This document shows, one piece after another, positions 1 to 59,775 of a DNA stretch of 64,000 bases; the stretch's first letter is position 1, and the number at the start of each line of letters is the position of its first letter. The notes under the pieces are model-generated. The model did no database searches. It saw only the letters and a program-made list of their open reading frames with translations, and had not been told where the DNA came from. Position numbers and translations under genes: made by a program. The stretch spans positions 124,001 through 188,000 of IMG/VR virus record IMGVR_UViG_3300029945_000001, one strand, 5' to 3'.

Positions 1-1170
1 TACCGCGTCCACCAACCTTTTTCCATAACGGTCTAGTTGGAAGTTCAGATCTCTCCGTACTGTAATAGGTAACCTCAGGAGATATAAGCATGACCAGATC
101 ATGCAGGTTCGTTCTTCATAGATTGAACTTCTAAGACCACATCTGAGGTGCAATGCCTCGGCAGAGATAGCTATGTCATGTAGCATAAGTAAAAAAAACA
201 CCAACGATGAAGTTGTACTCTCTAAAGAGTTAATGAACATGTTCAGACATCTTAGGTGAACATTTACACCTTCAAAAAGATGGTAGCAACAGTATGGGTG
301 AGAACAAAGCCATCATGCTGGATATCTGGTAACAGTGTCCAGACCCATGTGCCCCCAAGAAACCATTGCGCTACGAGGATCTAGTGGAATTGATGCCATG
401 CTTCGCATGCGCACAGGTTATAATAACCACATTGTCCTTATCTGAACATTTTTATTGACTCTCTCGGAGAAAACCCTCGTTTGTTGAAATGTTTATCACA
501 AAGCTGTTATGACTCAATGACATAACAGTTTACCGCTTAAGGTTAACCATCTATCCCTCATCACCGTAGTACGCCTAGGAGTTGTCCTATGTGGTCCAAA
601 ATGATGAATGATGAGCGGTGGCGAACAGCCGGGTTTGGAGACTGTGTGATATGGCCTCCTAACTGGGCTCTGTTGTTCTTTCATGCATTGACACCCAGTG
701 TATCGAGAGAATATCGGTCCGTCTCGAACGGACAACTTTCCTGCTTTAGATCGTATGTTTTGGCATATGTCTTAATCCGCACCGGTCCGGCCGATGTATG
801 GATATGGGCGTAACTCGTCAACGATCTGCTAACAGGCTGAAGAACATGGAAGGTATACCAGGACTACGATCGCCGGCTCTAACTTAAGTCATCTGGAGTC
901 ACTCAGGGACTATCCTGCGGTGAACATACGATGAGAGTTATCTTGGGATCATTTCCGTATACACACAACTGCTGTGTCCATAAGTGTTCTGTGTCTGAAA
1001 GCAAGGCATGAAGTGATTTTGTCACCGCCAACCCGCTATGTGGGAGATCCGTGAAAAGGTCTCCCACTACGGTTTCTTTAGTGTAGATTAAGGTGAACAC
1101 CGAACACGGAATGGGCCTCCGCGCAACACAATCCCCCGATGTTGCTATGTTCGGTGTTCTCCTTAGTTTA
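1..1170 (+). ncRNA. Candidate large structured non-coding RNA (5' end probably outside the window)
   Basis: No credible ORF, visibly more GC-rich than the genome. Many nested helices: 41-52/120-130, 226-234/454-462, 239-247/441-449, 501-531, 627-638/1028-1037, 680-686/1006-1012, 742-750/994-1003, 750-759/923-932, 1040-1067, 1089-1106/1148-1165. G-U wobbles favour the + strand. Confidence 0.75.
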
Positions 1171-1217
1171 TACATATTAAATTCTTCAGGCAGCTGCTTA
1201 TTTTTTATTTCAAAGAT

Positions 1218-1229
1218 AAATATATATTA
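1218..1229 (+). promoter_or_regulatory. phiKZ-type early promoter motif AAATATATATTA upstream of tRNA-like RNAs
   Basis: Same motif recurs upstream of about 10 transcription units; resembles the phiKZ early TATATTAC motif. Confidence 0.65.
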
Positions 1230-1242
1230 ATACATTGAATTC

Positions 1243-1322
1243 GCCGCAGTATCTCCTTGGCCTTCTAAGCTATTGAAAGAGTAACTGGACACATGGGGGT
1301 TCGAATCCCTCCTGCGGCGCCA
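1243..1322 (+). tRNA. Non-canonical tRNA-Arg(UCU)-like RNA lacking a normal D arm
   Basis: 7-bp acceptor GCCGCAG/CTGCGGC, G discriminator, CCA end, T arm GGGGG-TTCGAAT-CCCTC, anticodon loop CTTCTAA; D-loop-like AACTGGAC lies 3' of the anticodon arm. Confidence 0.65.
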
Positions 1323-1346
1323 ATCATTTAAAATATTCTAATCCGG

Positions 1347-1438
1347 GATCGTCGGTCTGAGTCTGACCTGGAGACCACTAAGATACCATATATCTTCTAA
1401 GCGGCAGGTCGTAGGTTCGAGTCCTACTGGGATCGCTA
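1347..1438 (+). tRNA. Degenerate or atypical tRNA-like element with the 3' half of a tRNA-Arg(UCU)
   Basis: CTTCTAAGCGGCAGGTC-GTAGGTTCGAGTCCTAC-TGGGATCG; imperfect acceptor pairing with GATCGTCG; no CCA and no canonical D arm. Confidence 0.45.
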
Positions 1439-1440
1439 AG

Positions 1441-1840
1441 CTGCCATACATCTTCTTCAGTTTCGGGTCCTTCTGAGTAAGGCATTTGAGTATGCACACC
1501 GATCCATGAAAGTGGGGACAGTGTATCGGTTCTTTTAAAAGTTTTGGCTCCGTTAACTGAGTCTGGACTGCTCACCGGCATGTATGTGTCAGTGTTGTCG
1601 GAAAAGCATACAAATGCATTAATGGTTAGAGGGTGTCCATCTTCGGATCGGCATTTTGGCCATAGTCGCTAGAAATCAGTGAAACGGGCTGGTCTCGGGA
1701 TAAATTGTAAGTCTGACGACCGAGATAAGATTAATGACTTACCAAAGTCCTGGTGTGTTAAAAAACTTATGGTGATGTAACCAGGGATGCGAACTATGTT
1801 TGCCATCGGACGCCAAGCGATCGATGAAACCATTCTAAAT
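1441..1840 (+). ncRNA. Candidate ~400-nt structured ncRNA
   Basis: ORF-free, GC-enriched; helices 1441-1451/1580-1592, 1498-1503/1525-1530, 1661-1669/1789-1798, 1692-1698/1720-1726, 1748-1754/1780-1786; followed by a terminator. Confidence 0.55.
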
Positions 1841-1872
1841 TCCACTTAACTTTTAGGTCGATGTTATCGGGC

Positions 1873-1925
1873 TGTCACATGCATGGACGTAATGTCCATG
1901 TATGTGACAAGTTCATTTATTTTTT
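1873..1925 (+). terminator. Intrinsic terminator hairpin
   Basis: TGTCACATGCATGGAC...GTCCATGTATGTGACA followed by a T-rich tract. Confidence 0.75.
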
Positions 1926-1953
1926 AATACATTTTGAGTTTTATACAAAAAAT

Positions 1954-1966
1954 AAATATATATTAC
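1954..1966 (+). promoter_or_regulatory. Early promoter motif AAATATATATTAC
   Basis: Recurrent motif just upstream of a GGAG RBS. Confidence 0.65.
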
Positions 1967-1983
1967 TTATTTAGAAATATGGA

Positions 1984-2289
1984 GTGACTATCATGAATTA
2001 TCAAATGGTATCTATTGCTCATCCTATCGATGAGCTATCTCATCGTGAAGATATGGCTAAACATCTGGACGATCTCTTCAAAAAAGATCAAAACCACAAT
2101 ACGATATTTCCTGAAGAACTTCAAAATGCTATCAGACTTATCGGCGTCGAGAAAATCGTTAGTAACTCTGATGTTACTAAGCAGGGCATTTATTATGCTC
2201 TGCGACAGAATCGTCTTCCTAGACTTCTTACGATCTCTAGGATCTTGAAAAGTATGGGCCTTCGTCTTGCTATCGTTGTTGACGAATAA
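1984..2289 (+). CDS. Putative addiction-module antidote protein (HI1420-like HTH), orphan
   Basis: Pattern 'ELSHREDMAKHLDD...GVEKIVSNSDVTKQGIYYAL..NRLPRLLTISRILKSMGLRL' matches the HI1420/TIGR02684 antidote family. Confidence 0.7.
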   Translation: MTIMNYQMVSIAHPIDELSHREDMAKHLDDLFKKDQNHNTIFPEELQNAIRLIGVEKIVSNSDVTKQGIYYALRQNRLPRLLTISRILKSMGLRLAIVVDE

Positions 2290-2723
2290 TAAAATCTGAA
2301 ATTACCAAAGCATATGGACATCTTGATAGTACATATATCCCAAAAGGAAATGATCCACAGCAACCCATCTCACTCTTACGAATTTAGAGTCTGTCTCTGT
2401 TGATAATACTCCAGACGAAGACGGACAATATGGAGTATTATTCCTCAATGGTGACAAAGGCACGGTATATACATATGTTCATTATAAAGATGCCGTTTCG
2501 GCACATGATGATTATGTTGGCAGAAAAAGAATATTTGATGTGCATAGAACCATGGCTGATGCATTACGTAAATAGTCTTTAAAGTGAAGATGTATTAGAA
2601 TGAGTGTGTGATAGTCTAACAAACTATCACACATTTGTTTTTTGTATAAAACTTAACATTAAAAACAGATGATAATAATATGTCACAAAAAAGCAATTTA
2701 TTTATTTTATAATTTCATTTAGT

Positions 2724-2800
2724 GCCCGTATAGCTTTAGCTGGTAGAGCACCGGATTTGTAATCCGGGGGTCGTGGGTTCGAATCCTACTGCGGGCACCA
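2724..2800 (+). tRNA. tRNA-Thr(UGU)
   Basis: Canonical cloverleaf, anticodon arm CCGGA-TTTGTAA-TCCGG, CCA end. Confidence 0.95.
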
Positions 2801-2805
2801 AATGA

Positions 2806-2881
2806 TGGGATATAGCTCAGTTGGTAGAGCGGGTGGCTGTTAACCACCATGTCGTAGGTTCGAGTCCTACTATCCCAGCCA
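2806..2881 (+). tRNA. tRNA-Asn(GUU)
   Basis: Canonical cloverleaf, anticodon arm GGTGG-CTGTTAA-CCACC, CCA end. Confidence 0.95.
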
Positions 2882-2899
2882 TTTTCTGCAAGATACGAC

Positions 2900-2946
2900 G
2901 AACAGGATGGTCCGACGGACCATCCTGTTCTCTATTTTATTTTTTT
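2900..2946 (+). terminator. Intrinsic terminator after the tRNAs
   Basis: GAACAGGATGGTCC...GGACCATCCTGTTC plus T tract. Confidence 0.8.
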
Positions 2947-2958
2947 CATAAAGTTATA

Positions 2959-2970
2959 AAATATATATTA
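2959..2970 (+). promoter_or_regulatory. Early promoter motif
   Basis: AAATATATATTA. Confidence 0.6.
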
Positions 2971-3006
2971 TTTAATTGAAACACACTATAGCTTCTCAAA
3001 AGGATA

Positions 3007-8297: not shown

Positions 8298-8310
8298 AGA
8301 TATATATTAC
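8298..8310 (+). promoter_or_regulatory. Early promoter motif AGATATATATTAC
   Basis: Recurrent motif. Confidence 0.65.
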
Positions 8311-8318
8311 TTTATTGT

Positions 8319-8665
8319 AGATGTATATGTGTGTCCATACATCTCAGCCAGTGTCATCTGATGATGATATTGGTAAATCTCCCACTGGGAGTGATCAATT
8401 GTCGATAGATCAAAAAACCAAAGAGTGTTAAGTCGACATTAACTCGATGGATCGTAATTTTCGTGAAGAGCTAGATGCGATAGCTTGTGGTGTAACTGGG
8501 ACATACAGAGCATGGCAACGCCTCTCGGTCACACTGCAAAATAAAGCTTCACGGAAAGTAACACTGAGGTCTTCTGTGCGGATTCCGGGACCGTCTCCTG
8601 CGGAAGCCAGACCTCCCCCAATCTGGTGTCTCTATCAAAAGAGATAGCCTCAGTGTTTTCTTCTT
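8319..8665 (+). ncRNA. Structured ~350-nt RNA or 5' leader
   Basis: Consecutive hairpins 8319-8344, 8348-8374, 8379-8390, 8423-8445, 8482-8548 and the 10-bp helix 8560-8569/8648-8657. Confidence 0.55.
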
Positions 8666-8693
8666 CCTCTCCAACAAAAGGACAATTTCTACC

Positions 8694-8939
8694 ATGAACG
8701 ACGCTCGTTATTCCCAACTGTGCTTCGATACAGCGGCAAAGATCAGAAGTGTTCTGCGTGCTGAAAACAAAACAATAAAACAATTGTCCATGGACATGAA
8801 GTGCGAAGTTTCCGATATTTTGGAACTTCTGTCCGAGCTCGACAAAGCAGACAAAGAAATAAATTTGTACAAAATCCAGGCTGTGTTCCTGGCACTCAAA
8901 TACGAGTATCGATTTACGTATGATGAGGCTGTTGCTTAA
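8694..8939 (+). CDS. Small putative HTH protein
   Basis: AAAGGA RBS; helical pattern TIKQLS.DM.CEVSDI.ELL. Confidence 0.55.
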   Translation: MNDARYSQLCFDTAAKIRSVLRAENKTIKQLSMDMKCEVSDILELLSELDKADKEINLYKIQAVFLALKYEYRFTYDEAVA

Positions 8940-9016
8940 ATTTAGCATCCGTTGTGTCTATGAGATGCTAATGCATCTCATAGATATTCTTTATTTTTTG
9001 TATTCAAAAATAAAAC

Positions 9017-9028
9017 AAATATATATTA
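9017..9028 (+). promoter_or_regulatory. Early promoter motif
   Basis: AAATATATATTA upstream of the NYN gene. Confidence 0.6.
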
Positions 9029-9090
9029 TTAAATTGAAGAAAATGTGCTTAACAGCATATCGGTTCAAATATATTCAGAGGAACAAGCAA

Positions 9091-10314
9091 ATGTCTAATA
9101 CGACCCTTATGGTTATTGATGGTGCTAATGTCACTAGTACTTGCATCTCTATCTACCCCAACAATCGTTTTGACTGGGATGTTATTCGTAGATACTTTGT
9201 TGATAACTACGATGTTGTGTTGTTTAATTATTACACATCTATTGTTACCGATGAAAACGGATACACAAAGAATCATGGCTTTTATCGTTGGTTGTCGACA
9301 AATGGATTTCGAATGATTACCAAAGATGCTAAGATCATCGTGGATCAGGCTACTGGAAGAACTATTATTAAAGGAAATATGGATCTTGATATCGCTTGCG
9401 ATACCTTGTCTATTAAAGGATATAAACGTGTTATTCTTGCGACGAATGATTCGGATTTTGTGAAGTTGGCAGACACCCTCTCCAAGCGCGGCGTCGTCCC
9501 TGTCTTTGCCGTGGTGAGTGGTCAGATCAGCCGCGAGATCATGTCGTCTGGATACGACCTCGTCGATCTGGCACAAATTTGCAATTTTAGACCGGAAGAA
9601 TCTTCTCTGCGTGGTGTGGTTGAGCAGCAGCGTAAAATGCTTGGTCGCGAATATACACGACATCCCGTGAATCAGACTAGAGATGTTTCGTTGTATCAAC
9701 AACAGAATAGTCGCCAGCCCGATAATGAGGAAGACATCGAAGATGAGTTTACAGTCTCCAATGTTTCTTCGACAGAAGATGCTGCCAGAATGTCGAATGC
9801 TCTTTATGTTCCTGGTATAGTTCGGACTGAGAGACTTGGTCCAGTGATGTTTCTGCGGAACGATGAGCATCGAGGTGATGTCGACGAAGATGGCGAAGAT
9901 GTCTTTCCGGTTGGCAGTAACTCTGTCGAAGAAAAGCCGACAGATATGCCTGAGGAAAAACAGGAGCCCGTCTCTAATGTTTCTTCTACTGAGGAAGCTC
10001 CGGCTCCTCGTAAATCCTCTGGCCGGCCGGCACCCATCGATATTCGTACATTGAATTTCGATAAAGATAACATCGAGACTGTTGTTGGAGCTCCTTCTCA
10101 GGATACTCAGATACAGACTTGGTGTAATTCTGGTGTGTTTGACAAGGACGGATACGAAGTCTGTATTACTGCGAGAAATACCGACGGAACTTTCGTGGTG
10201 AAATTCGAAGACGGGACGATCGAGACTGTAAGTCTCGGCATGTTGTTCATGCGTCGATATAACAAGTGGACACCGGCCAGTTTCTCAAAAGTTCAGTCCG
10301 TAATCGGAAAATAA
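9091..10314 (+). CDS. NYN (LabA/DUF88, PIN-like) domain protein with an acidic C-terminal extension
   Basis: IDGAN, KGNMDLDIACD and NDSDF catalytic motifs; GAGG RBS before the ATG at 9091. Confidence 0.85.
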   Translation: MSNTTLMVIDGANVTSTCISIYPNNRFDWDVIRRYFVDNYDVVLFNYYTSIVTDENGYTKNHGFYRWLSTNGFRMITKDAKIIVDQATGRTIIKGNMDLDIACDTLSIKGYKRVILATNDSDFVKLADTLSKRGVVPVFAVVSGQISREIMSSGYDLVDLAQICNFRPEESSLRGVVEQQRKMLGREYTRHPVNQTRDVSLYQQQNSRQPDNEEDIEDEFTVSNVSSTEDAARMSNALYVPGIVRTERLGPVMFLRNDEHRGDVDEDGEDVFPVGSNSVEEKPTDMPEEKQEPVSNVSSTEEAPAPRKSSGRPAPIDIRTLNFDKDNIETVVGAPSQDTQIQTWCNSGVFDKDGYEVCITARNTDGTFVVKFEDGTIETVSLGMLFMRRYNKWTPASFSKVQSVIGK

Positions 10315-17011: not shown

Positions 17012-17776
17012 ATGTCTAATAATGGACTCGTGAGTGTTTGGGCAGAAATGCCCAATGATAAACAAGAAAGTGACAGTGCTGAAATGAATACATTAGCGAA
17101 TGAAGAAACAACCGATCGCGAAGTTGTCGATAAAGAAGTTATTGTTGAATGGCCTGTTGTTATTGAAGACGATTCTGAAGAAGAACTTGTTGATGAAAAT
17201 GTTGTAACTGAAATTACACATTTAGATGTATCAGATTGTGAAATAATTTATAAATCTCCTTCTGATATATCTAAAACAGTAATAGACCTTCCTGAAGTTT
17301 GGACGAATGGTAGTTCTAAAGAAGATAAATTAATCTTGAGTGAAATTAATCCTATTGAAGAAGATAAATCAGCTGAAGACATTGCTACTGAATTTCCTTT
17401 AAGTGATTTCATATATGAAGATGATGGATTTGGAAAAGCTCAGTCGTCATTAGATGGCCCTTCTCCTTCTATTATCGAAAAGACTGTTACAACCGGACTT
17501 GGTATTTTTGAAGGATCTACTAGAATTAATGGTCTTAATGAAGCACAGACTGTTGCTGTTAGAGAAATTGCAAAGATACATCAGAAGCTATATATTGAAA
17601 TGGCAACTATGTGTAAAGATATGGAATCTATTATTAATACTCTTATTAATATGTCAGAACTTCCAAAAGATATGGTCCCTTGCAATGCGGTTCATTTTAG
17701 ACATCTCATCGAAAAACACCCACTATTCTTTAAGTTTAGAAAGACTGCTAAACTAAAAGGACGTGTTGGTAAATAA
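17012..17776 (+). CDS. Acidic hypothetical protein
   Basis: 254-aa D/E-rich ORF. Confidence 0.7.
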   Translation: MSNNGLVSVWAEMPNDKQESDSAEMNTLANEETTDREVVDKEVIVEWPVVIEDDSEEELVDENVVTEITHLDVSDCEIIYKSPSDISKTVIDLPEVWTNGSSKEDKLILSEINPIEEDKSAEDIATEFPLSDFIYEDDGFGKAQSSLDGPSPSIIEKTVTTGLGIFEGSTRINGLNEAQTVAVREIAKIHQKLYIEMATMCKDMESIINTLINMSELPKDMVPCNAVHFRHLIEKHPLFFKFRKTAKLKGRVGK

Positions 17777-17849
17777 TAATATAGAGAAATGGCAATCTAG
17801 ATTGCTACTCTGTTGTATGCATCCAACAACTTCTTCAAGGAAATTTACG

Positions 17850-18827
17850 ATGGCTATCAATTCAGTTTGGGCCGGCACCGAGTCCTTCGGTACTGCCGTT
17901 AAGTCGATCAGTGCGATCGACGCTACCATCAATATGCTCGGCAACACTTCCTGTGACATGTCTTCGGCTTTCGCCATGGAGTCGCTGAGCTCACAGATCG
18001 ACGTGATGAAGCATGCCTATGGGCAGATCAAGGCCGGCAAGTCAATCGGTGGCATGGAAACTCTTTATCCGAACGTCTTCGGCAGCGTCGCCGGCCTGGA
18101 ATCTGGTGCGTTCAACAAGGCCGCTGCCCTGGAAGGCCTTGGCGAGAAGATCAAGGAGACGGCCTCTCGTTGGTGGCAGGCTGCCAAGGAACATGTGGTC
18201 AAGTACAAGAAGTGGTACATCGGCGCCGCCATTGCCATTGCCACTACCGCCGCTGTCATCGCCGGATTCAAGACCGAAACTGGCCGCAACGTTGCGACCT
18301 GGGTTGGCAAGAAGGCCGTCAAGATCCCCGGCGTCCAGGCCGTCAAGAATTGGCTGGAGTGCATTCGTCGTTCGCGTGCTGAGCTGAATCGTGCTGCCGC
18401 CCTGGCCAAGGACAATCCTGCTGCCGCCAAGACCTGTGCCGAGAACGCCAGCAAGATCATCGCCGGCGAAAAGATGGAACTGACTCAGGTCCATCTGGAT
18501 GCTGCCGCTGCTCAGAAAGAGCTGATCGATTACAAAGCTGCCACCATTGCGGCCGCCAAAGAATCGAACTTCGCCAAGGCCGATATCGCCAAGATCGAAG
18601 CGCTCTGCGACAAGAACATCAATGCCAAGGACCCCGGCGCCAACGCCACCGCCGCTCGTGGTGCTTGGAACATGATCCTGGCTGTTCTGAAGAGCTTCGG
18701 TCATCTGATCGTCTCCGGCTTCGCCAAGGTCAGCGGTGCTGCCAAGTGGTTGTGGAGCCAGCTGTCCAGCAAGGAAGCTCGTGCCGAGACCAAGGGCAAG
18801 ATCGCTGGCGCGGCGGCCAGTGCTTAA
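17850..18827 (+). CDS. Putative abundant internal head protein (paralogue 1)
   Basis: AAGGA RBS at the 17850 start; GTE/AME/GME/GLE/ALE motifs; GC3-rich codons. Confidence 0.75.
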   Translation: MAINSVWAGTESFGTAVKSISAIDATINMLGNTSCDMSSAFAMESLSSQIDVMKHAYGQIKAGKSIGGMETLYPNVFGSVAGLESGAFNKAAALEGLGEKIKETASRWWQAAKEHVVKYKKWYIGAAIAIATTAAVIAGFKTETGRNVATWVGKKAVKIPGVQAVKNWLECIRRSRAELNRAAALAKDNPAAAKTCAENASKIIAGEKMELTQVHLDAAAAQKELIDYKAATIAAAKESNFAKADIAKIEALCDKNINAKDPGANATAARGAWNMILAVLKSFGHLIVSGFAKVSGAAKWLWSQLSSKEARAETKGKIAGAAASA

Positions 18828-30039: not shown

Positions 30040-32355
30040 TTAAGCCTGGGGATCAGTCTCATCGATTTCAGCATCGGCATTAACTAAGGCCTGACCGACA
30101 CCATCGACACCTGAAGTCAGAACGCCATCGTTGCCAACCAGAGGATTGTTGTTCACCTGGATGGATTCAGACAACATCAGCTTCAGAATGGCATCGAGAC
30201 CCTTAACGCTGATGATCATGCCGATCGGGTTCGTCGGGTAGACGACCTCACGGCTGTTGGCGACAGCGCGCTGAGTCACGGCCATGGCGTTGTTGAACGT
30301 GAACTTGCCGGCGAAGATGCCACGGTCCAGATTCTTGCCAAAGCTGATGACGCTTTCCGGGTCAGCATCGCGAACCGGGACGATGAGCATCAGACCTTCA
30401 AAGTTCTTGTACGACGTGGCGACGCAGTCGATGCGTGAGCCGTTCGGAAGATAGAAGCTGTAGTCTGCCGACGGAGCTTCTTCGACGCGAGTGTCGTTCA
30501 GTTCGTTGAAGTAGGTTTTGATGGCCAGCAGGGTTGCAATGATCGTCGGGGTGGTGACCAGACGATACACAGCCTTTTCGCCAGGGTTCAGCTGGTTCAG
30601 GTACAGCGAGGTCAGCTGCGAGTCGGCGATGATCGCATTCAGACGATTCATAACCAGCGAATGCATGTCCGAGTTACGCTCGGTTTCACGCATAACGACG
30701 GCATTGGAAACGTCCAGAACACCACGCCAGACATTCGGGTTACACAGAGTGCCGGCCAGGAAGTCCTGAGCCACCGAATTGTACCAGTCGATGAGGGGAT
30801 CGGTTTCCTCGTGCTTCAGGCGATTGTAGACGTTGTTCAGGCACTCGCCGATCATGCGAACGGCCTTGGCATCATTGCCCAGCGACATGATATCATTGAG
30901 GATCTTGATGATGTCTTCGGCCGACTTGCCTTCAGTGTCCTTGATGCTGTATTCGGCGGTGTACATGCGAGACACGGGAATATAGAAGGACTGCTCCTTC
31001 TGTGTCACGCGAGCCGAAATATTCGCCTTGCGCATATTTTCTTCGCTGTACTGGGCGAAGGGTTCGAAAGCGAACAGCGAGAAGGACAGCTTGTTGTAAG
31101 CAGTATTCACGGCATCCGCAACGGTCGTGCCGGCGGCAGGGAAAAGCTGGGCGTTCAAGCTACCATAGCCTGTCGAGGCGCCGGTCTTGAGGTTAAGCTT
31201 CATGGTGAAGTTGAGATCGATTTCGGCACCGGCGTCACCAAGAACAGACAACAACGATGACGCAGTGCCCGCAGCGGTAACAGCAGTCGAAGGAATGACA
31301 CGCTGGATACGAGGAGCTGCTTCACGATCGGCCGAGTCGTTCGTGTTGGTGCGCTGCACCAGACGCGAGGCTGCCTGATATTCGGTACGAACAGGGATAT
31401 ATTCCGTGGTCGTGCCGTCGGTGACGGCGATCCAGACTTCGCGAACATAGGCGCCTTCGCCGATGATGTCAGTCCAGTTCAGATTGTCGTAGCCGACGGT
31501 GTTGGAGCTGACGCCGAGCTTGAACATGTTGAACGGCACGCCGACCTTAACCAAGTTCTGGTGAACCAGGACAGGGTTGGTCGAATCGTCGTTTTCCATG
31601 AACAGTTCGACACGTTTGGCGGTGGTGTCGACGAACGAAGGATCGCGCATCAGCCGGATCAGAGGAGTGCGAATGGCGTTCGAATAGCGAATATCGGCGT
31701 TCGGGTTCTGCGAAGCAGCCAGATCGTAAACATCGCCATTGGCGATCTTGGTGACGACGACGGTTTCTTCGGTAGCGATGCGCGGCAGGATACGATCGAT
31801 CAGCGACTTGAAGACGCGCAGCATGGTCAGCGAGATCGACAGACGAACATCGGTGACGACGCTATCGATGCCTTCACCGAACGACTCGCCGGCAGCGATA
31901 TCGTTAGTGACAGCATTGACACCACCATTGCCGAACAGCGAGCCCAGAGCGATGCATTCGGTTCCGGCAACGCCGCCCTTGGCATCAGCAAAGTTGGCAT
32001 TGGTCGAATGCAGATGCCCCATGACACCAAGCGTAGCAGCTTCGATGGCCGCCGCAATGCGAGGATTGGTACGATCCAGACGATTGTTCTGGGTCGAGCC
32101 GCTCATCGATTCGATGGTACCGATGACGAAGTTTTCAACGGCGGCCAGGTCGATGCGCTCTTCAGCGCCACGAATGACGGTCATCGGCTTGTCGAAATAT
32201 TCCAGGCCGGCAGCATTGGTGACCGAAGCAACCAATGAATTCGAACTCAGAAATGATTCTGTCGCCGCAGCCAGAGTGAACGCAGCACCCAGAGACAGAC
32301 CGCTGTTCTGGGCAACACCACGCAGCTGCTGCTTCCATGAATTAAGTTTGCTCAT
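30040..32355 (-). CDS. Major capsid protein (phiKZ gp120-like)
   Basis: ~770 aa, GC3-rich, N-terminal A-X-E cleavage motifs (ATE, GLE, AVE, AGE); helicase-gp119-MCP arrangement as in phiKZ. Confidence 0.82.
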   Translation of the reverse strand: MSKLNSWKQQLRGVAQNSGLSLGAAFTLAAATESFLSSNSLVASVTNAAGLEYFDKPMTVIRGAEERIDLAAVENFVIGTIESMSGSTQNNRLDRTNPRIAAAIEAATLGVMGHLHSTNANFADAKGGVAGTECIALGSLFGNGGVNAVTNDIAAGESFGEGIDSVVTDVRLSISLTMLRVFKSLIDRILPRIATEETVVVTKIANGDVYDLAASQNPNADIRYSNAIRTPLIRLMRDPSFVDTTAKRVELFMENDDSTNPVLVHQNLVKVGVPFNMFKLGVSSNTVGYDNLNWTDIIGEGAYVREVWIAVTDGTTTEYIPVRTEYQAASRLVQRTNTNDSADREAAPRIQRVIPSTAVTAAGTASSLLSVLGDAGAEIDLNFTMKLNLKTGASTGYGSLNAQLFPAAGTTVADAVNTAYNKLSFSLFAFEPFAQYSEENMRKANISARVTQKEQSFYIPVSRMYTAEYSIKDTEGKSAEDIIKILNDIMSLGNDAKAVRMIGECLNNVYNRLKHEETDPLIDWYNSVAQDFLAGTLCNPNVWRGVLDVSNAVVMRETERNSDMHSLVMNRLNAIIADSQLTSLYLNQLNPGEKAVYRLVTTPTIIATLLAIKTYFNELNDTRVEEAPSADYSFYLPNGSRIDCVATSYKNFEGLMLIVPVRDADPESVISFGKNLDRGIFAGKFTFNNAMAVTQRAVANSREVVYPTNPIGMIISVKGLDAILKLMLSESIQVNNNPLVGNDGVLTSGVDGVGQALVNADAEIDETDPQA

Positions 32356-32357
32356 TG

Positions 32358-34052
32358 TCAAAGAACTCCTGAAATACGCGTATTAAGACCAAGCTTGGTC
32401 AAGAGCGTTTTGGTTGCATCAATGGAAGATGTGAATAACCACAGCTTACACCATTCGTCAAGATAGGCTTTAGTTTCTGAAGAATACTGAGGATCATTCT
32501 TAATATCACCATTGAGTTTAGCAACAGCGAGTCTAACAAAATGATCATTTAGAGTCTCTTTGGAATCGATCAGCGGAATGAACAGCTGAGAATTCTCATC
32601 TTCGGAGATTTCATCAGAGACTTCAGATGATGCAGAACCATCGTCTTGATTGTCTATATTATCATCATCACCATTATCTATAGTGTTTGTATCACCAAAG
32701 TTAGCGTCATCAGATGTTCCATCGCCAGATTCATCGGTTCCTTGTGAATTGGTGTCATCATCGCTGATAGTACTATCAGGATTAGCATCACTATTACTAT
32801 TATTATTGGTAGTATCTTCACCAGAAATATCAGAACTTGGGGAAGCATCAGACGAATCATCTTTGTTAGGAACTTTCGTTTCATCGTCTGATCCCTTTGT
32901 GTCTTTATTATCTACTGTATTTTCAGGATCATCTTCTTCTGATATGGGTTTATCTGCTTCGATATTATCATCTTGATTATTTTCAGTGGCATCTGTTTTA
33001 TCTTCATTTTCCTCATCGTCTTCTTCATCATCTTTAACATCGCCTAGAGCTTCTAATCCATAAAAATATCCAGTATCGTGTCCACTACCGGATACGAAAC
33101 CATTTGGTGATTTTTTATAATAATAATCATCAACATAAATAAGAACTCTATCAATACTATCATAATTTTCAATTCCTTCTAAAGCATCACGTATTCTTTC
33201 CCAATAACGAGTGGCGTCTTTAACATCATAAATGTAATAACCAGTATTGTCGGCACCAACATTTTCAAAATTGCTAACATGTATGGCAAATGCTTTATTC
33301 TTAGTATATTTCAAACAAAGATTTGCACAGACAAAATTCTTATATGAAATAATACCATTATTAATAGCATTAATAGGAAGAGCAGTCAATGCAATAACTT
33401 TAGCAATTTCTAAAAAGCTAGGTTTCATCGTAAGAAACTTAAGACTATTTATCATCTTCCAGTAATTATCCGAATTCTTATTAAATTTGCTATTACAAAT
33501 CAATTCATCTGTATCAATGACAACATGATGGATAGGATCTAATTGTAATGGGAATAGATCGCTTTTCAAATTGACTCTAGGGACATAAAAAATAGTTTTT
33601 GTATTGGTAGTTTCAAAATTAATAGCTGAGAAGATAGCTAGAATACCATTTAATTTAGATAATCCGTGTTTCAGATATAATCCTTTTAATAAAGGAATAT
33701 CACTATCAATAATATTGTTTGTATGAATATACTTATTTACATATTGACCAATCTGGCTATCTTTAACTGATTGAGACATAGTAATGATATTATCTTTAAC
33801 CAATGATAATAAAGCAAGAACATGAGAATGAGTATTAGATTCAACAAATATATTAAAATATTTATACATAATAATTTGTTCTAAAAGAAGCTTATCATTA
33901 TCAAGATCGACATTTCTAATGTCTATATTTATTTTAAGATCTAAATTAATAGCAGTATCATCAAAAATAACTTTATCAAGTACTGAAATATTTCTGAAAA
34001 TATCATTTAAAACAATAAGTGGCTGTCTGTCCATGGGAGCATTGTCCTTCAC
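32358..34052 (-). CDS. Virion head-associated protein with an acidic low-complexity region (phiKZ gp119-like position)
   Basis: Between helicase and capsid genes; GLE motif before the D/E/N-rich tract. Confidence 0.6.
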   Translation of the reverse strand: MKDNAPMDRQPLIVLNDIFRNISVLDKVIFDDTAINLDLKINIDIRNVDLDNDKLLLEQIIMYKYFNIFVESNTHSHVLALLSLVKDNIITMSQSVKDSQIGQYVNKYIHTNNIIDSDIPLLKGLYLKHGLSKLNGILAIFSAINFETTNTKTIFYVPRVNLKSDLFPLQLDPIHHVVIDTDELICNSKFNKNSDNYWKMINSLKFLTMKPSFLEIAKVIALTALPINAINNGIISYKNFVCANLCLKYTKNKAFAIHVSNFENVGADNTGYYIYDVKDATRYWERIRDALEGIENYDSIDRVLIYVDDYYYKKSPNGFVSGSGHDTGYFYGLEALGDVKDDEEDDEENEDKTDATENNQDDNIEADKPISEEDDPENTVDNKDTKGSDDETKVPNKDDSSDASPSSDISGEDTTNNNSNSDANPDSTISDDDTNSQGTDESGDGTSDDANFGDTNTIDNGDDDNIDNQDDGSASSEVSDEISEDENSQLFIPLIDSKETLNDHFVRLAVAKLNGDIKNDPQYSSETKAYLDEWCKLWLFTSSIDATKTLLTKLGLNTRISGVL

Positions 34053-38088: not shown

Positions 38089-38166
38089 ATATGTAGAGAA
38101 GACTGGTTAAGAACGCGTCTTGATCAGTCTATTCTCTAAAATCCGTTAAAATTGGGAATTAAATAA

Positions 38167-39462
38167 ATGCACTTTGATATTTCCACGCTGACTGCTGACG
38201 CTTTGACTTCTGCTACCATGATTGGTACTCTTGTTTCGGAGTCCGCAGCCCCCCTCATCGACTGGGACAGCATGCGCAAGGAGATCGAATCCTGGCCGCT
38301 GGTCTCGGAGGTGCCGCAGGACAAGGACGTTCCGCAGCTGAACATGACTTCGATCACCGGCAAGACCTGCCGTGAGCTGGTCAAGGGCGGCATCAAGACC
38401 GAGAATTTCATCGCCATCATCAAGTCGATGCTGAATGTCCGCGCCCATGTCATGTCCTCGAACGCCGGCAAGGCCCAGACTCTTTATCCGACCGTGAACG
38501 AATATGGCGCCCGTGAAGTCGGCAATGTCATCGTCGTCGCCAACAAGCATGCCGGCAAGCCCCGGTCGATCAACATCAATCGCCAGGCTTATGACCATCC
38601 GAAGAATGCCAATGACGAGACCCGTGGTCGTCAGCGGCACGTCAGCTGCGTCGTCGAAGTCGGTGGCTATATCGGTTTCGCTTTCTACAACAAGTTCTCT
38701 CCGAACACCCTGATCCAGACTTTCTTCCAGGTCACGCATGTCATTCCGCTCGGCGGCGACAGCAAGCTGTTCGAAATCGGCATGACCCTGGTTCATGCGG
38801 CGTTCGCTTCGGCCGCCGACGGCAAGGTCCTGGCCACTCCTCTGGAAGATGATACTCCGCTGGCCAATCTGATCGATGCGATGCAGCGTCGTTTGGCCGT
38901 CGGTGCTCTTCAACTGGATTGGCCGCTGTACAGTCAGATCTTCGTTCCGCATTTCGGCCTGAAGAATGACACCGCCGCCGGCATCGCCAAGATCGATCAT
39001 TGGAAGGATCTGCACTCCGACACCGTGACTGCCAATCTCGACAAGCCGGTCAGTGCCGACATCACCGACATTGAAATCGATCTGATGCACAATCTGGTCG
39101 AAGCGCGTGCCACCTCCACGCCGAAGACCGACGGCGATGGCAATGCCGTCTATGATGAAACTGCTCTGGTCATCAGCCATCACATGGACGACACCGGCAA
39201 TACCATCCGTGCGATGATGACCCTGATCAACAACAACGAAACCATCTGGACCGGCGTCACCGACATCACGGCCAACAACTTCGATCGTCCGGTCGGTGAT
39301 GACATCACCTATCCGAGCGGCAAGTTGAAGGCGGCGGTTCTCGATCCGGCCCTGATTCTCGGCGCCACCACGTTCCAGCGTCTGAAGACCGACGTCATCA
39401 ATCGTCAGGTCGAAGGAAAGCATCCTGTGGAGAACCCGACCATCCTGGGCATTCTGCGTTAA
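38167..39462 (+). CDS. Probably highly expressed early protein of unknown function
   Basis: 431 aa, GC3-rich, own promoter and terminator. Confidence 0.85.
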   Translation: MHFDISTLTADALTSATMIGTLVSESAAPLIDWDSMRKEIESWPLVSEVPQDKDVPQLNMTSITGKTCRELVKGGIKTENFIAIIKSMLNVRAHVMSSNAGKAQTLYPTVNEYGAREVGNVIVVANKHAGKPRSININRQAYDHPKNANDETRGRQRHVSCVVEVGGYIGFAFYNKFSPNTLIQTFFQVTHVIPLGGDSKLFEIGMTLVHAAFASAADGKVLATPLEDDTPLANLIDAMQRRLAVGALQLDWPLYSQIFVPHFGLKNDTAAGIAKIDHWKDLHSDTVTANLDKPVSADITDIEIDLMHNLVEARATSTPKTDGDGNAVYDETALVISHHMDDTGNTIRAMMTLINNNETIWTGVTDITANNFDRPVGDDITYPSGKLKAAVLDPALILGATTFQRLKTDVINRQVEGKHPVENPTILGILR

Positions 39463-39481
39463 GCAGAAAACCAACTAAAGT

Positions 39482-46314: not shown

Positions 46315-46350
46315 CTTTAGTTTTCCTTGTATGTGTTTGCTTTATTAAAA

Positions 46351-46509
46351 CTATTTAGTGAGACCTAAAATAAGCCCAGTTCCTGTTATGGTAGCATAAC
46401 TTATGCCCACAATACAATTACCGGCAGCACCGCCACCAGATCCAGAATTTCCAAGACCGTCGTCAGTACCACGAGATCCAGCCTGACCGAAATCGCTCCA
46501 TCCGCCAGC
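46351..46509 (-). pseudogene. Orphaned former C-terminus of the glycine-rich tail protein
   Basis: Start-less frame AGGWSDFGQAGSRGTDDGLGNSGSGGGAAGNCIVGISYATITGTGLILGLTK*, similar to the C-terminus of 46683-47408. Confidence 0.7.
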
Positions 46510-46670
46510 TAAGACGCTTCCGCCTGCCGGCGTTGCTGAAGGCGAGCCGACATTTCCGACAAGACTTCGGGATGAGCCAGGATGTAGTGGTGCACGGCGG
46601 CATCGAAGCCGTATTTGCCCAGCACCAGGCCCATCGATGCCGCTGCAATAAGGTGAAAACGTGATTTCAT
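46509..46670 (-). CDS. 53-aa GC-rich ORF resembling the N-terminus of ScsC/Com1-type DsbA proteins
   Basis: AGGAG RBS; MKSRFHLIAAASMGLVLG...VHHYILAHPEVLSEMSARLQQRR. Confidence 0.6.
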   Translation of the reverse strand: MKSRFHLIAAASMGLVLGKYGFDAAVHHYILAHPEVLSEMSARLQQRRQAEAS

Positions 46671-46682
46671 TTCAAATTTCTC

Positions 46683-58188: not shown

Positions 58189-59775
58189 ATGTCTAGTGTT
58201 TCCGGTTTTGGTACTCAGGAAAGCGATTCTCCCAAGGCTCCGCAGGGCGAAAAGCAGGCTCCTGGTTTCAGCAATTCTCAGCAGGAAAAGAAGCGTTCTC
58301 TCCTGCACAGTTCATTGTCCGAATTTGACAGCTTCTCGACGCAGTCCCCGCAGCTATCGAAGTTCGTCGAGCGTATGGAAAAGGAAATCCCCGGCGCCAA
58401 GGTCGTTCGCATCCCTGAGCCGTCCAACACTCTGGCGGTGATGGTCGACAACATGTTCTATGTTCTGCTGTTCCCCGACATGGGCGTTCAGTTCGGAACT
58501 CTTGAATTCAAGCGCAAGGCGTTCATCGCTTATTTCCCGAGCGTTCGCAAGCGCCTCGAAGCTGATTTCGCGAATTGCACCATCATTCAGAATGCCATCG
58601 TCATTCCCGAAGACTACCAGAACGAAACTCGCGTCGGCGCCATCATCGCCCATCTGCGGTCTACGTTCTCGGCGAACAAGCCTGGCAATCTGGATGTCTA
58701 CGGGTCGATCAGCTTCTTCAAGGGTTCGACCTTGACGATCTCGACGTCGTTGGCTGAAGTCCACAACTACTACGATCGCCATTGGCCGTTCGTGACCAAG
58801 CCGCGTTTCGACTACGGCATCGTTGTCAGCTCTCCTGTTCGTGACGAACTGTCGGTCTCCAACAACGAACCGACGGAACCGAAACAGCTGTTCGTCGTCG
58901 GCGGCTACACCAGCTTCGTTCGGACCAATCCTCCGAACAACTCATTGGCTCGCGAAAAGCTTCCGCATGTTCTGGCTCCGATCGTGCACATTTCTTCTGT
59001 GTTCTCGATCATGCCGATCAATGCCTTCGCTCCTCTCGCCATCGGCCTGGGTGGGTCGAAGTTCCTCTATGATGGTCTGTGGCTGTCGCCTTATACTTCA
59101 TTCGAAAGCGGAAAGCCGAACCTCGGCCGCCTGATGCCGGATGTTCTGGACAACAGCCGCAATGAACTGATGTCGTGCGACAACATGGACGACGTTAAGC
59201 AGTTCGTCCAGATCGCCTGCTTGACTCCTGTTCTGGCTATCGATAACATCCCTGGCGTTCCGACGCTGTCCATGCTCAAGCTGTTCATGGACGATGGCAA
59301 CAACAAGCGGGTCATCGATGCCTTCAGTGACTTTATGGGCAAGCCGTATGATGGCAATAGCGACATCTTTTCGGTCGCTTCGACGGTCATCACCGGCATC
59401 GTCAACTACCCTGACAGCCCGACCGATAGTCGCGTCGTCGACTATATGTCACTGGTCAGCGGTAAGGGATATCCTGCTGAGGAAATCTCGAACCTGCTGG
59501 ACGTCTATGAGAACCAGCATTACCAGGCTTCGATTGTCGCCAAGCATTCGAAGTTCATTCCGCTGTCGTACAACATTGTCAGCATCCTGAAGCCGTCTTT
59601 TGTGCAGGCCCTGGTCAATGCTATCAACAACGGCGTGACCATCAAGCAGTCCAACAGCAATACCAGCAGCAGTAACACCAACTGGCTGATCGATATGGCC
59701 AAGGGCTATAGCGAGGCTCGTCTGAGCATGGGTGCCAATACTGTCGAAGGTGGTCTCGGCGGCATGTACCTGTAA
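58189..59775 (+). CDS. chmA: Chimallin (phage nucleus shell protein) candidate
   Basis: GC3-rich; immediately upstream of the nvRNAP beta'-N gene as in phiKZ gp54-gp55; P.V.IS, W..P..NLG.L, AID..G and DSR.VDY motifs; flexible termini. Confidence 0.72.
   Translation: MSSVSGFGTQESDSPKAPQGEKQAPGFSNSQQEKKRSLLHSSLSEFDSFSTQSPQLSKFVERMEKEIPGAKVVRIPEPSNTLAVMVDNMFYVLLFPDMGVQFGTLEFKRKAFIAYFPSVRKRLEADFANCTIIQNAIVIPEDYQNETRVGAIIAHLRSTFSANKPGNLDVYGSISFFKGSTLTISTSLAEVHNYYDRHWPFVTKPRFDYGIVVSSPVRDELSVSNNEPTEPKQLFVVGGYTSFVRTNPPNNSLAREKLPHVLAPIVHISSVFSIMPINAFAPLAIGLGGSKFLYDGLWLSPYTSFESGKPNLGRLMPDVLDNSRNELMSCDNMDDVKQFVQIACLTPVLAIDNIPGVPTLSMLKLFMDDGNNKRVIDAFSDFMGKPYDGNSDIFSVASTVITGIVNYPDSPTDSRVVDYMSLVSGKGYPAEEISNLLDVYENQHYQASIVAKHSKFIPLSYNIVSILKPSFVQALVNAINNGVTIKQSNSNTSSSNTNWLIDMAKGYSEARLSMGANTVEGGLGGMYL

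What the first reader, a model, noticed from the sequence alone, without database searches (positions are those of the whole stretch)
1441..1840. Second structured ncRNA (~400 nt) likely co-transcribed with the tRNA-like RNAs
Seen: an ORF-free, GC-enriched segment between the tRNA-like elements and a strong terminator. It has two closed domains (1441-1592 and ~1626-1838) with internal multiloops. Inference: a further phage sRNA, so 1-2900 would be a dedicated RNA island of at least six RNAs.
Basis: partly seen in the sequence, partly recalled or inferred. Interest (0 to 1): 0.6.

Follow-up and report, generated by a model that had tools for sequence, protein, structure and literature searches.

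The report
Orphan RNA trailing odd phage tRNAs
The 400-base stretch is a real non-coding piece of a giant peat-bog phage: it is transcribed behind an unusual arginine tRNA and part of it survives as RNA in nature. It has no relatives anywhere, its proposed two-domain fold is not supported, and its function remains unproven.

Summary
Window 1441-1840 lies in a phiKZ-like jumbo phage from peat, about 33% GC overall. It is free of ORFs and has 44.5% GC, against about 20% at third codon positions and in spacers.

It is the 3' part of a roughly 690-nt unit. The unit runs from a phage promoter motif (1221-1237) to a 17-bp terminator (1873-1909).

Metatranscriptome contigs identical to the phage cover 1543-1805 in two of four peat RNA runs. 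Nothing covers 1441-1542. The segment is therefore transcribed, and probably cleaved in an AU-rich linker (1530-1547).

The best local fold is a branched domain at 1548-1690 (z -2.4) carrying a cUUCGg hairpin.

I found no Rfam family, no paralogue and no homologue. The searches covered 72 related jumbo-phage records, 78 other phage tRNA islands, IMG/VR, the metagenome contigs and the genome contigs. Covariation therefore cannot be tested.

The best reading is a lineage-specific stable trailer RNA of a tRNA operon, like T4 RNAC/RNAD. A functionless trailer is nearly as likely.

The more notable by-product is upstream. "tRNA-like 1" (1243-1322) belongs to a widespread phage tRNA family, supported by covariation, with a rearranged D arm and mostly Arg or Ile anticodons.

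The parts
1221..1237 (+). Phage promoter-like motif TATATATTA-N-ATTG, 6 nt upstream of the first tRNA-like gene
   Evidence: The pattern has 5 matches in the window against 0.12 expected, all on the + strand. The core TATATATTA occurs 20 times on + and once on - in the 104-kb record, mostly in front of genes. It resembles the AT-rich extended -10 early promoter described for phiKZ (PMC8244752). That it works as a promoter here is an inference.
1243..1322 (+). Unconventional tRNA-Arg(UCU) with encoded CCA ('tRNA-like 1'). A 3-bp D-stem-like helix encloses the anticodon arm, and a D-loop-like UAACUGGA follows it.
   Evidence: It scores 74 bits (E 1.4e-21) to family model R1, which was built without it. 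Canonical tRNAs of the island score 30 bits or less. The Rfam tRNA model gives only 29.2 bits and ARAGORN does not call it.
1323..1381 (+). Spacer with a small hairpin (GGTCTGAGTCTGACC), 42% GC
   Evidence: Sequence and GC. Its predicted long-range pairing with 1691-1730 is not significant: 5-8% of shuffles do as well.
1382..1435 (+). Truncated tRNA-Arg(UCU)-like minihelix ('tRNA-like 2'). The acceptor stem (one mismatch), anticodon loop CUUCUAA, 3' anticodon-stem strand and T arm are kept. The D arm and 5' anticodon-stem strand are missing, and there is no CCA.
   Evidence: Rfam tRNA 24.7 bits and R1 22.1 bits. The 3' half aligns with a canonical tRNA-Arg(TCT) of phage record G031.
1443..1529 (+). 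Irregular long hairpin (hairpin I). Not seen in the RNA contigs.
   Evidence: Helices have pair probability 0.86-0.99. z is -1.4, not significant. There is no RNA contig over 1441-1542.
1530..1547 (+). AU-rich single-stranded linker TTCTTTTAAAAGTTTTGG, the proposed endonuclease cleavage zone
   Evidence: It is unpaired in the MFE and centroid structures. The RNA contigs begin at 1543 and 1561. Cleavage here is inferred.
1548..1690 (+). Branched domain II: three stacked closing helices and three hairpins, including a 42-nt hairpin (1622-1663) capped by C(UUCG)G at 1641-1646
   Evidence: z is -2.39, with 2.5% of 200 shuffles as stable. The UUCG hairpin alone gives z -2.2. Closing helices have probability 0.90-0.98.
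1543..1805 (+). The part present as RNA in environmental metatranscriptomes
   Evidence: X19 has a contig over L003 5599-5843 (window 1561-1805) at depth 41 with 0 mismatches. X20 has a contig over L003 5581-5812 (window 1543-1774) at depth 2.9 with 0 mismatches.
1691..1860 (+). 3' part with several short hairpins (1735-1760, 1770-1783, 1789-1803, 1804-1826), weakly supported
   Evidence: Pair probabilities are 0.76-0.96. Window z-scores are -1.0 to -1.7.
1873..1926 (+). Intrinsic terminator: a 17-bp stem with a 3-nt loop, then a T-rich tail
   Evidence: Terminator scan, pair probability 1.0 and window z of -4.8. The next promoter motif follows at 1957.

Best explanation
Window 1441-1840 is the non-coding 3' trailer of a short phage transcription unit, roughly 1238-1926. 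The first product of that unit is an unconventional tRNA-Arg(UCU) (1243-1322). A truncated tRNA-Arg minihelix (1382-1435) follows it.

Proposed mechanism:
- The phage RNA polymerase starts just downstream of the TATATATTA motif (inferred).
- The two tRNA-shaped elements are cut out by the host tRNA-processing enzymes, RNase P and the 3'-end nucleases (inferred from what is known of tRNA precursors).
- This frees the trailer, whose 3' end is protected by the terminator hairpin.
- A further cut in the AU-rich linker 1530-1547 (inferred) leaves an RNA of at least 263 nt (1543-1805). Its core is the branched domain 1548-1690 with a cUUCGg hairpin.
- This piece accumulates enough to be assembled from peat metatranscriptomes (shown).

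I take it to be a lineage-specific stable passenger RNA of a tRNA operon, the same kind of thing as T4 RNAC/RNAD. If it has a function, it most likely acts in trans by binding a protein or RNA. That function is not shown.
For: - No ORF and no Pfam hit.
- GC is 44.5% against a neutral level near 20% (GC3 0.195; spacers 0.14-0.30).
- The promoter motif is enriched about 40-fold, is strand-specific, and lies 6 nt before the tRNA.
- A strong terminator follows.
- RNA contigs 100% identical to the phage cover 1543-1805 in 2 of 4 RNA runs, at depth 41 and 2.9. In X19 and X20 the adjacent repressor ORF and the AT-rich spacers are uncovered.
- All 7 adapter-bearing contigs of the island carry the adapters in the same orientation. 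In a dUTP-type library this means + strand RNA (my inference).
- The + strand folds 7-15 kcal/mol better than the - strand across 1401-1750.
- Domain II gives z -2.39 and has a canonical cUUCGg tetraloop hairpin.
- Two neighbouring ORF-free segments of the same island are very abundant as RNA, at depth about 100-150. The island therefore does make stable non-tRNA RNAs.
- T4 offers a precedent: RNAC and RNAD, still of unknown function (PMC9697503).
Against: - Thermodynamic support for the whole region is no better than chance (z -0.96).
- No homologue or paralogue was found anywhere, so neither sequence nor structure conservation can be shown.
- The RNA is absent from two runs in which the neighbouring 850-nt RNA has depth 110-118. 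One of those runs, X22, covers the repressor mRNA at depth 3.8, so the trailer is not constitutively abundant.
- Contigs cannot define RNA ends or levels.
- The genome also contains GC-rich protein genes (GC3 up to 0.74). High GC is therefore not by itself a signature of RNA structure here.
- No significant complementarity to other phage sequence was found.
Confidence: 0.45

Rival explanations
1. Functionless 3' trailer or decaying remnant. The unit once held more tRNA genes, and the truncated tRNA-Arg at 1382-1435 is one relic. On this reading 1441-1840 is leftover sequence that is transcribed only because the terminator lies further on. The RNA contigs would be processing intermediates.
For: - A truncated tRNA-Arg lies directly upstream.
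- A 28-nt partial duplicate of the tRNA-Met 3' half lies at window 24-51. tRNA debris therefore exists in the island.
- The fold z-score is at chance level.
- Nothing shows conservation.
- RNA coverage is patchy and variable, in 2 of 4 runs.
Against: - No residual tRNA signal is found in 1437-1930, even at E<=10 with lax filters.
- A GC of 44.5% would be expected to decay towards the roughly 20% neutral level of this genome unless the sequence is recent or selected.
- Depth 41 in X19 exceeds anything seen on neighbouring mRNA.
Confidence: 0.35
2. Cis-acting precursor element. The trailer folds with or near the tRNA-like elements and, with the terminator hairpin, protects the precursor from 3' exonucleases or guides ordered processing of the unconventional tRNA-Arg.
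For: - It lies in the same transcription unit.
- Folding the whole unit gives z -2.88 and predicts helices between 1337-1376 and 1691-1730 with probability above 0.9.
Against: - The long-range duplex is not better than shuffles (5-8% do as well).
- In other phages, members of the same tRNA family are followed directly by ORFs or other tRNAs, not by such a trailer. The tRNA therefore does not need it.
Confidence: 0.12
3. A hidden small-protein gene, or the pseudogene of a GC-rich protein gene.
For: - Short frames exist: 42 and 33 aa on the + strand, 58 and 67 aa on the - strand.
- The genome has GC-rich genes.
Against: - No Pfam hit even at E<=1.
- The starts are GTG or TTG and I saw no obvious ribosome-binding site.
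- The longest frames are on the - strand, while the promoter, the terminator and the adapter orientation point to + strand transcription.
Confidence: 0.03
4. The RNA evidence is carry-over of phage DNA into the RNA libraries.
For: The tool warns that DNA can be present in RNA libraries and that contigs do not prove transcription.
Against: - Coverage over 5 kb is extremely uneven, from 0 to 151.
- It follows the GC-rich ORF-free blocks and not the ORFs or spacers.
- The adapter orientation is uniform in all 7 contigs.
Confidence: 0.03

Closest known systems
Bacteriophage T4 RNAC and RNAD (stable RNAs of the T4 tRNA region)
   Same: - Non-coding RNAs encoded beside a phage tRNA cluster.
- They accumulate in infected cells.
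- Their function is still unknown (PMC9697503).
- That they are released by tRNA-type processing is my own knowledge.
   Different: - No sequence similarity: blastn of window 1-3000 against 50,697 phage records matched tRNA genes only.
- This RNA is longer, at least 263 nt.
- It sits behind an unconventional tRNA and a truncated one.
- Its ends and stability have not been measured.
GOLLD and ROOL large ornate RNAs
   Same: They are encoded in phages and prophages, often next to tRNA islands, and GOLLD is sometimes covalently linked to tRNAs (10.1101/2024.12.08.627333). They are GC-rich and ORF-free.
   Different: - No match to any Rfam model, even at E<=10.
- The region is shorter, about 260-490 nt against roughly 580-800 nt or more.
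- No covariation-supported ornate structure can be shown.
- The neighbouring RNA of 850 nt or more (L003 2883-3765) is a better candidate for that kind of molecule than this segment.
tRNA-operon spacer-derived small RNAs, such as E. coli 3'ETS-leuZ (own knowledge)
   Same: It lies between the last tRNA-shaped element and the operon terminator. It would be released as a by-product of tRNA processing.
   Different: - 3'ETS-leuZ is about 50 nt and acts by base-pairing as a sponge.
- This RNA is several times longer.
- No complementary partner was found in the phage. Host targets could not be searched because the host is unknown.
tRNA-like processing signals that define the ends of long non-coding RNAs, such as MALAT1 and mascRNA (own knowledge)
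   Same: A tRNA-shaped minihelix (1382-1435) abuts the non-coding RNA and could serve as an RNase P or RNase Z cleavage signal that sets its 5' end.
   Different: Here the tRNA-like element lies 5' of the RNA, not 3'. The system is bacterial and phage. Cleavage has not been shown.

Membership tests
Any Rfam 15 family (4,227 models, including GOLLD, ROOL, tmRNA, 6S, RNase P, introns, ribozymes and riboswitches) | Covariance-model match at the gathering score, or at least a weak match | tested here: not met
   At gathering score the whole window gives tRNA hits only. Region 1-3000 at E<=10 gives nothing inside 1441-1840. Region 1437-1930 alone at E<=10 gives one chance-level snoRNA hit of 13 bits against an 80-bit threshold.
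GOLLD/ROOL-type large phage RNAs | Encoded in a phage beside tRNA genes | tested here: met
   Six canonical tRNAs and two tRNA-like genes flank it. The capsid protein is phiKZ-like.
GOLLD/ROOL-type large phage RNAs | Large (more than about 550 nt), elaborate secondary structure supported by covariation | tested here: inconclusive
   The trailer is at most about 490 nt. The fold z-score is -0.96. No homologues exist for a covariation test.
T4 RNAC/RNAD-type stable RNAs of phage tRNA clusters | Lies in the same transcription unit as phage tRNA genes | tested here: met
   The promoter motif is at 1221-1237, the tRNA-like genes at 1243-1435 and the terminator at 1873-1926, with no terminator-like site between them. 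Co-transcription is inferred from the layout, not observed.
T4 RNAC/RNAD-type stable RNAs of phage tRNA clusters | Accumulates as a discrete stable RNA during infection | tested here: inconclusive
   Identical RNA contigs occur in 2 of 4 metatranscriptomes, at depth 41 and 2.9. Contigs give neither ends nor levels.
T4 RNAC/RNAD-type stable RNAs of phage tRNA clusters | Sequence similarity to the T4 RNAs | tested here: not met
   blastn of window 1-3000 against 50,697 phage records matched tRNA genes only.
tRNA or degenerate tRNA (for 1441-1840 itself) | Match to a tRNA covariance model or to ARAGORN | tested here: not met
   No tRNA hit in 1437-1930 at E<=10. No R1 hit with filters off. ARAGORN finds none.
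   74 bits, E 1.4e-21, full-length, and not part of the training set. Family structure: 97.4% of cells paired against 66% in shuffles, and 17 of 20 pairs show compensatory changes.

The most novel reading that the evidence does not exclude
The segment would be one of at least three previously undescribed, phage-specific structured RNAs made from this jumbo phage's tRNA island. The other two are the RNA of 850 nt or more that ends in tRNA-Leu and the roughly 340-nt RNA at window 675-1017. On this reading they are a new set of tRNA-island-associated functional RNAs in the sense of GOLLD and ROOL, with the 1548-1690 domain as a functional core.
Probability: 0.2. Interest if true: 0.6.

Novelty: new member of a known kind. 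Interest (0 to 1): 0.4.

Why it matters
Phage tRNA islands repeatedly turn out to carry large RNAs of unknown function: T4 RNAC/RNAD for fifty years, and more recently GOLLD and ROOL. This phage adds an expressed, family-less example, and environmental RNA data show that its island makes abundant non-tRNA RNAs.

On its own the 400-nt segment is a modest, unverifiable candidate. Its value lies in the context it exposed:
- a transcription unit headed by an unconventional tRNA-Arg(UCU) that standard tRNA finders miss;
- the fact that this tRNA is the phage's only candidate reader of its commonest arginine codon;
- the fact that it belongs to a widespread phage tRNA architecture.

Tried and rejected
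**Homologue searches, all negative for 1441-1840**
- blastn against 50,697 phage records.
- Capsid tblastn against phages: no relative at all.
- IMG/VR through three neighbouring or hallmark proteins: only 100% identical contigs.
- The 145-aa neighbour protein: only its own cluster.
- Helicase relatives at 30-45% identity: synteny is not kept, and the metagenome records behind those loci could not be searched.
- 72 IMG/VR jumbo-phage records searched whole with the island or the segment: only tRNA-arm hits.
- nhmmer on four relatives fetched whole.
- The complete 208-kb copy of the phage: no paralogue.
- 78 loci carrying the same odd tRNA: none.
- An exact 18-mer in IMG/VR and a 21-mer in genome contigs.
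- The metagenome scan through the adjacent repressor gene: one identical contig only, with 0 differences in 3 kb.

**Other ideas tested and dropped**
- Long-range pairing of 1337-1376 with 1691-1730.
- Antisense targets within the phage.
- A decayed tRNA inside the segment.
- A coding or pseudogene reading.
- Paralogy with the other two ORF-free blocks.

**Not used:** The search of protein representatives, structure prediction and complex prediction, because there is no protein question.

Full report
**Where the window lies**

The window is bases 15039-79038 of a 104,583-nt IMG/VR virus record. Identical copies occur on 208-kb and 230-kb contigs from peat metagenomes.

The phage has a phiKZ-type major capsid protein and a divergent DnaB helicase. 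Overall GC is 33.5%, and median GC3 is 0.195. tblastn with the capsid protein finds no cultured relative.

**Checking the observation**

Window 1441-1840 has no ORF of 60 aa or more on the + strand. Its short frames hit no Pfam family. GC is 44.5%, more than twice that of the surrounding spacers (0.14-0.30) and of third codon positions.

Upstream lie two tRNA-like elements, at 1243-1319 (Rfam tRNA 29.2 bits) and 1382-1435 (24.7 bits). Downstream is a terminator with a 17-bp stem and a T-rich tail at 1873-1926.

The motif TATATATTA-H-NNN-WTTG lies at 1221-1237, 6 nt before the first tRNA-like element. It occurs 5 times in the window against 0.12 expected, always on the + strand. Its core occurs 20 times on + and once on - in the whole record, mostly in front of genes. 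It resembles the AT-rich extended -10 early promoter of phiKZ (PMC8244752). The layout is therefore one transcription unit of about 690 nt. That is an inference.

The proposed fold is not confirmed:

| Segment | z-score |
|---|---|
| 1437-1850, whole region (15 of 100 shuffles fold as well) | -0.96 |
| 1443-1529, hairpin I | -1.4 |
| 1548-1690, branched domain II | -2.39 |
| 1622-1663, cUUCGg-capped hairpin | -2.2 |

The elements that recur in the ensemble are hairpin I, an unpaired AU-rich linker (1530-1547) and domain II.

The + strand folds 7-15 kcal/mol better than the - strand through 1401-1750. This advantage comes from base composition.

**Is it transcribed?**

Six peat metatranscriptome runs hold parts of the island. 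I laid four of them on 5,001 bases of the island.

Window coordinates are L003 coordinates minus 4038. Contigs with no mismatch cover:
- window 1561-1805 in X19, at depth 41;
- window 1543-1774 in X20, at depth 2.9.

Nothing covers 1441-1542 or the AT-rich spacers. In X19 and X20 nothing covers the adjacent repressor ORF either. X21 and X22 lack the segment altogether, although a neighbouring RNA has depth 110-118 there. X22 does cover the repressor mRNA, at depth 3.8.

All seven adapter-bearing contigs of the island carry the adapters in one orientation. For a dUTP-type stranded library this means + strand RNA. That is my inference; the tool warns that contigs show neither strand nor ends.

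Together with the very uneven coverage (0 to 151), this argues against DNA carry-over. The segment is transcribed. Its 3' two-thirds survive, probably after a cut in the AU-rich linker. It is not constitutively abundant.

**Surroundings**

The RNA island runs from L003 2096 to 6919. In order it holds:
- tRNA-Ser;
- 1.5 kb of ORF-free DNA at 44% GC;
- tRNA-Leu, tRNA-Lys and tRNA-Met;
- 1.2 kb of ORF-free DNA at 45% GC;
- the unit studied here;
- a 101-aa repressor-like ORF (phrog_4268, E 1.9e-12);
- tRNA-Thr and tRNA-Asn.

Two other ORF-free blocks are far more abundant as RNA:
- L003 2883-3765, at depth up to 151, ending at the 3' end of tRNA-Leu;
- window 675-1017, at depth about 80-108.

None of these blocks matches Rfam.

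**The tRNA-like elements**

Element 2 keeps the anticodon loop CUUCUAA, the 3' anticodon-stem strand, the variable loop, the T arm and a 7-bp acceptor stem with one mismatch. All of these match a canonical tRNA-Arg(UCU). It lacks the D arm and the 5' anticodon-stem strand, so it is a truncated tRNA-Arg.

Element 1 looked like a D-armless oddity, so I scanned IMG/VR for its loop-to-T-arm spacing. That gave 83 loci with the same architecture. A second pattern that left the anticodon free gave 27 loci.

In an alignment of 23 members, the following structure is 97.4% paired against 66% in shuffles and 36-47% in slid controls:
- a 7-bp acceptor stem;
- a 3-bp helix that encloses the anticodon arm;
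- the 5-bp anticodon stem;
- the T arm.

Compensatory changes occur in 17 of 20 pairs, including all three pairs of the new helix.

The model built from that alignment scores element 1, which was not in the training set, at 74 bits (E 1.4e-21). The canonical tRNAs of the island score 30 bits or less.

The model finds 122 members in 88 loci. Among the members not selected by my patterns, the anticodons are:
- Arg, 23 (UCG 9, ACG 6, CCU 4, UCU 3, GCG 1);
- Ile, 10 (UAU 6, GAU 4);
- CAU, 1;
- UAC, 1.

ARAGORN of 78 of them.

The phage has no canonical tRNA-Arg, and AGA is its commonest arginine codon, at 404 of 890. Element 1 is therefore most likely the phage's working tRNA-Arg(UCU), and the unit is a tRNA operon with a long trailer.

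In other phages, members of this family are followed by ORFs or other tRNAs, not by anything like the segment.

**Search for relatives of the segment**

Nothing was found. The searches were:
- blastn against phages;
- IMG/VR through neighbouring proteins, which returned identical copies only;
- 72 whole jumbo-phage records related through the helicase;
- nhmmer on four relatives;
- the complete genome, for paralogues;
- 78 tRNA-island loci;
- exact-word scans of IMG/VR and genome contigs;
- the metagenome scan through the adjacent gene, which returned one identical contig.

Conservation and covariation are therefore untestable. They are not refuted.

**Interpretation**

The best reading, at about 0.45, is a processed, lineage-specific stable trailer RNA of a tRNA operon, comparable to T4 RNAC and RNAD, whose functions are still unknown (PMC9697503). 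If it has an activity, it is probably in trans.

A functionless trailer or tRNA-array relic is nearly as likely, at about 0.35. The truncated tRNA upstream and a 28-nt partial duplicate of tRNA-Met at window 24-51 show that such debris exists in the island.

A cis role in precursor processing comes in at about 0.12. It is weakened because the predicted long-range helices are not better than shuffles, and because the tRNA family does without such trailers elsewhere.

Coding and artefact readings are unlikely.

High GC is a weaker argument here than usual, because the genome also holds GC-rich protein genes with GC3 up to 0.74, the capsid gene among them.

**Comparison with known systems**

The segment shares its location, and possibly its mode of production, with T4 RNAC/RNAD, with GOLLD and ROOL (which are often near phage tRNA islands), and with tRNA-spacer-derived sRNAs. 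It is a member of none of them by sequence or model.

**Verdict**

This is a real, transcribed, non-coding segment. Its structure and function are unproven, and it is a new orphan example of a known kind. Interest is moderate, at 0.4. The unconventional tRNA family and the two abundant neighbouring RNAs deserve their own follow-up.

Noticed in passing
window 1243-1322 (also L153-L258 in IMG/VR): 'tRNA-like 1' belongs to a widespread phage tRNA family with a rearranged core. A 3-bp D-stem-like helix encloses the anticodon arm, and the D-loop-like UAAyUGGA follows it. Covariation is strong: 97.4% paired and 17 of 20 pairs compensatory. Model R1 finds 122 members in 88 loci. Unselected anticodons are mostly Arg (23) and Ile (10). 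ARAGORN misses 76 of 78, and the Rfam tRNA model gives only about 30-42 bits. I found no paper describing it, though the library is incomplete.
   Followed up: partly
L003:2883-3765 (window -1155 to -273, upstream of the window): An ORF-free block of about 45% GC between tRNA-Ser and tRNA-Leu is the most abundant RNA of the island. Contigs of 660-851 nt, at depth 110-151 in three runs, end at the 3' end of tRNA-Leu. It has no Rfam match. It is a candidate large RNA covalently linked to a tRNA, in the manner of GOLLD or ROOL.
   Followed up: partly
window 675-1017: A second abundant non-coding RNA: identical (at most one mismatch) contigs of 277-291 nt in three runs, at depth 78-108, in the ORF-free gap after tRNA-Met. 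Local fold z-scores reach -2.4 to -2.9 (601-800). It has no Rfam match.
   Followed up: partly
window 1382-1435: 'tRNA-like 2' is a tRNA-Arg(UCU) that has lost its D arm and its 5' anticodon-stem strand but keeps the acceptor and T arms. It is a pseudo-tRNA that could still act as a processing signal.
   Followed up: partly
window 24-51: A 28-nt partial duplicate (79% identical) of the 3' half of the adjacent tRNA-Met, directly after that gene. It shows that tRNA debris exists in the island.
   Followed up: no
window 30040-32361, 17763-18827, 38146-39474, 58189-59775 and others: The genome has two classes of composition. Most ORFs have about 30% GC with GC3 near 0.2. A set that includes the phiKZ-like capsid gene has 52-59% GC with GC3 of 0.6-0.74. 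The phage tRNAs (Ser-UGA, Leu-UAA, Lys-UUU, Thr-UGU, Asn-GUU, Arg-UCU) all read A/U-rich codons.
   Followed up: no
window 8301-9036: Two more copies of the promoter motif (8301, 9020) flank about 600 nt at 45% GC that has no + strand ORF. The second copy lies inside the long frame 8920-10314 (NYN domain), so that gene probably starts later. The stretch 8318-9000 may be another non-coding transcript.
   Followed up: no
window 46315-46682 and 61272-61525: Further ORF-free stretches with raised GC (0.50 and 0.41). They have no Rfam match.
   Followed up: no
L225:6330-6684 (IMGVR_UViG_3300035696_000017): A bacterial class A RNase P RNA (276.6 bits) sits inside a dense tRNA array on a 114-kb, 61% GC viral contig that also carries a member of the odd tRNA family.
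   Followed up: no
G031:C1:117334-117703 (IMGVR_UViG_3300024312_000003): ARAGORN calls a tmRNA gene in this helicase-related jumbo-phage record, among 9 tRNAs.
   Followed up: no
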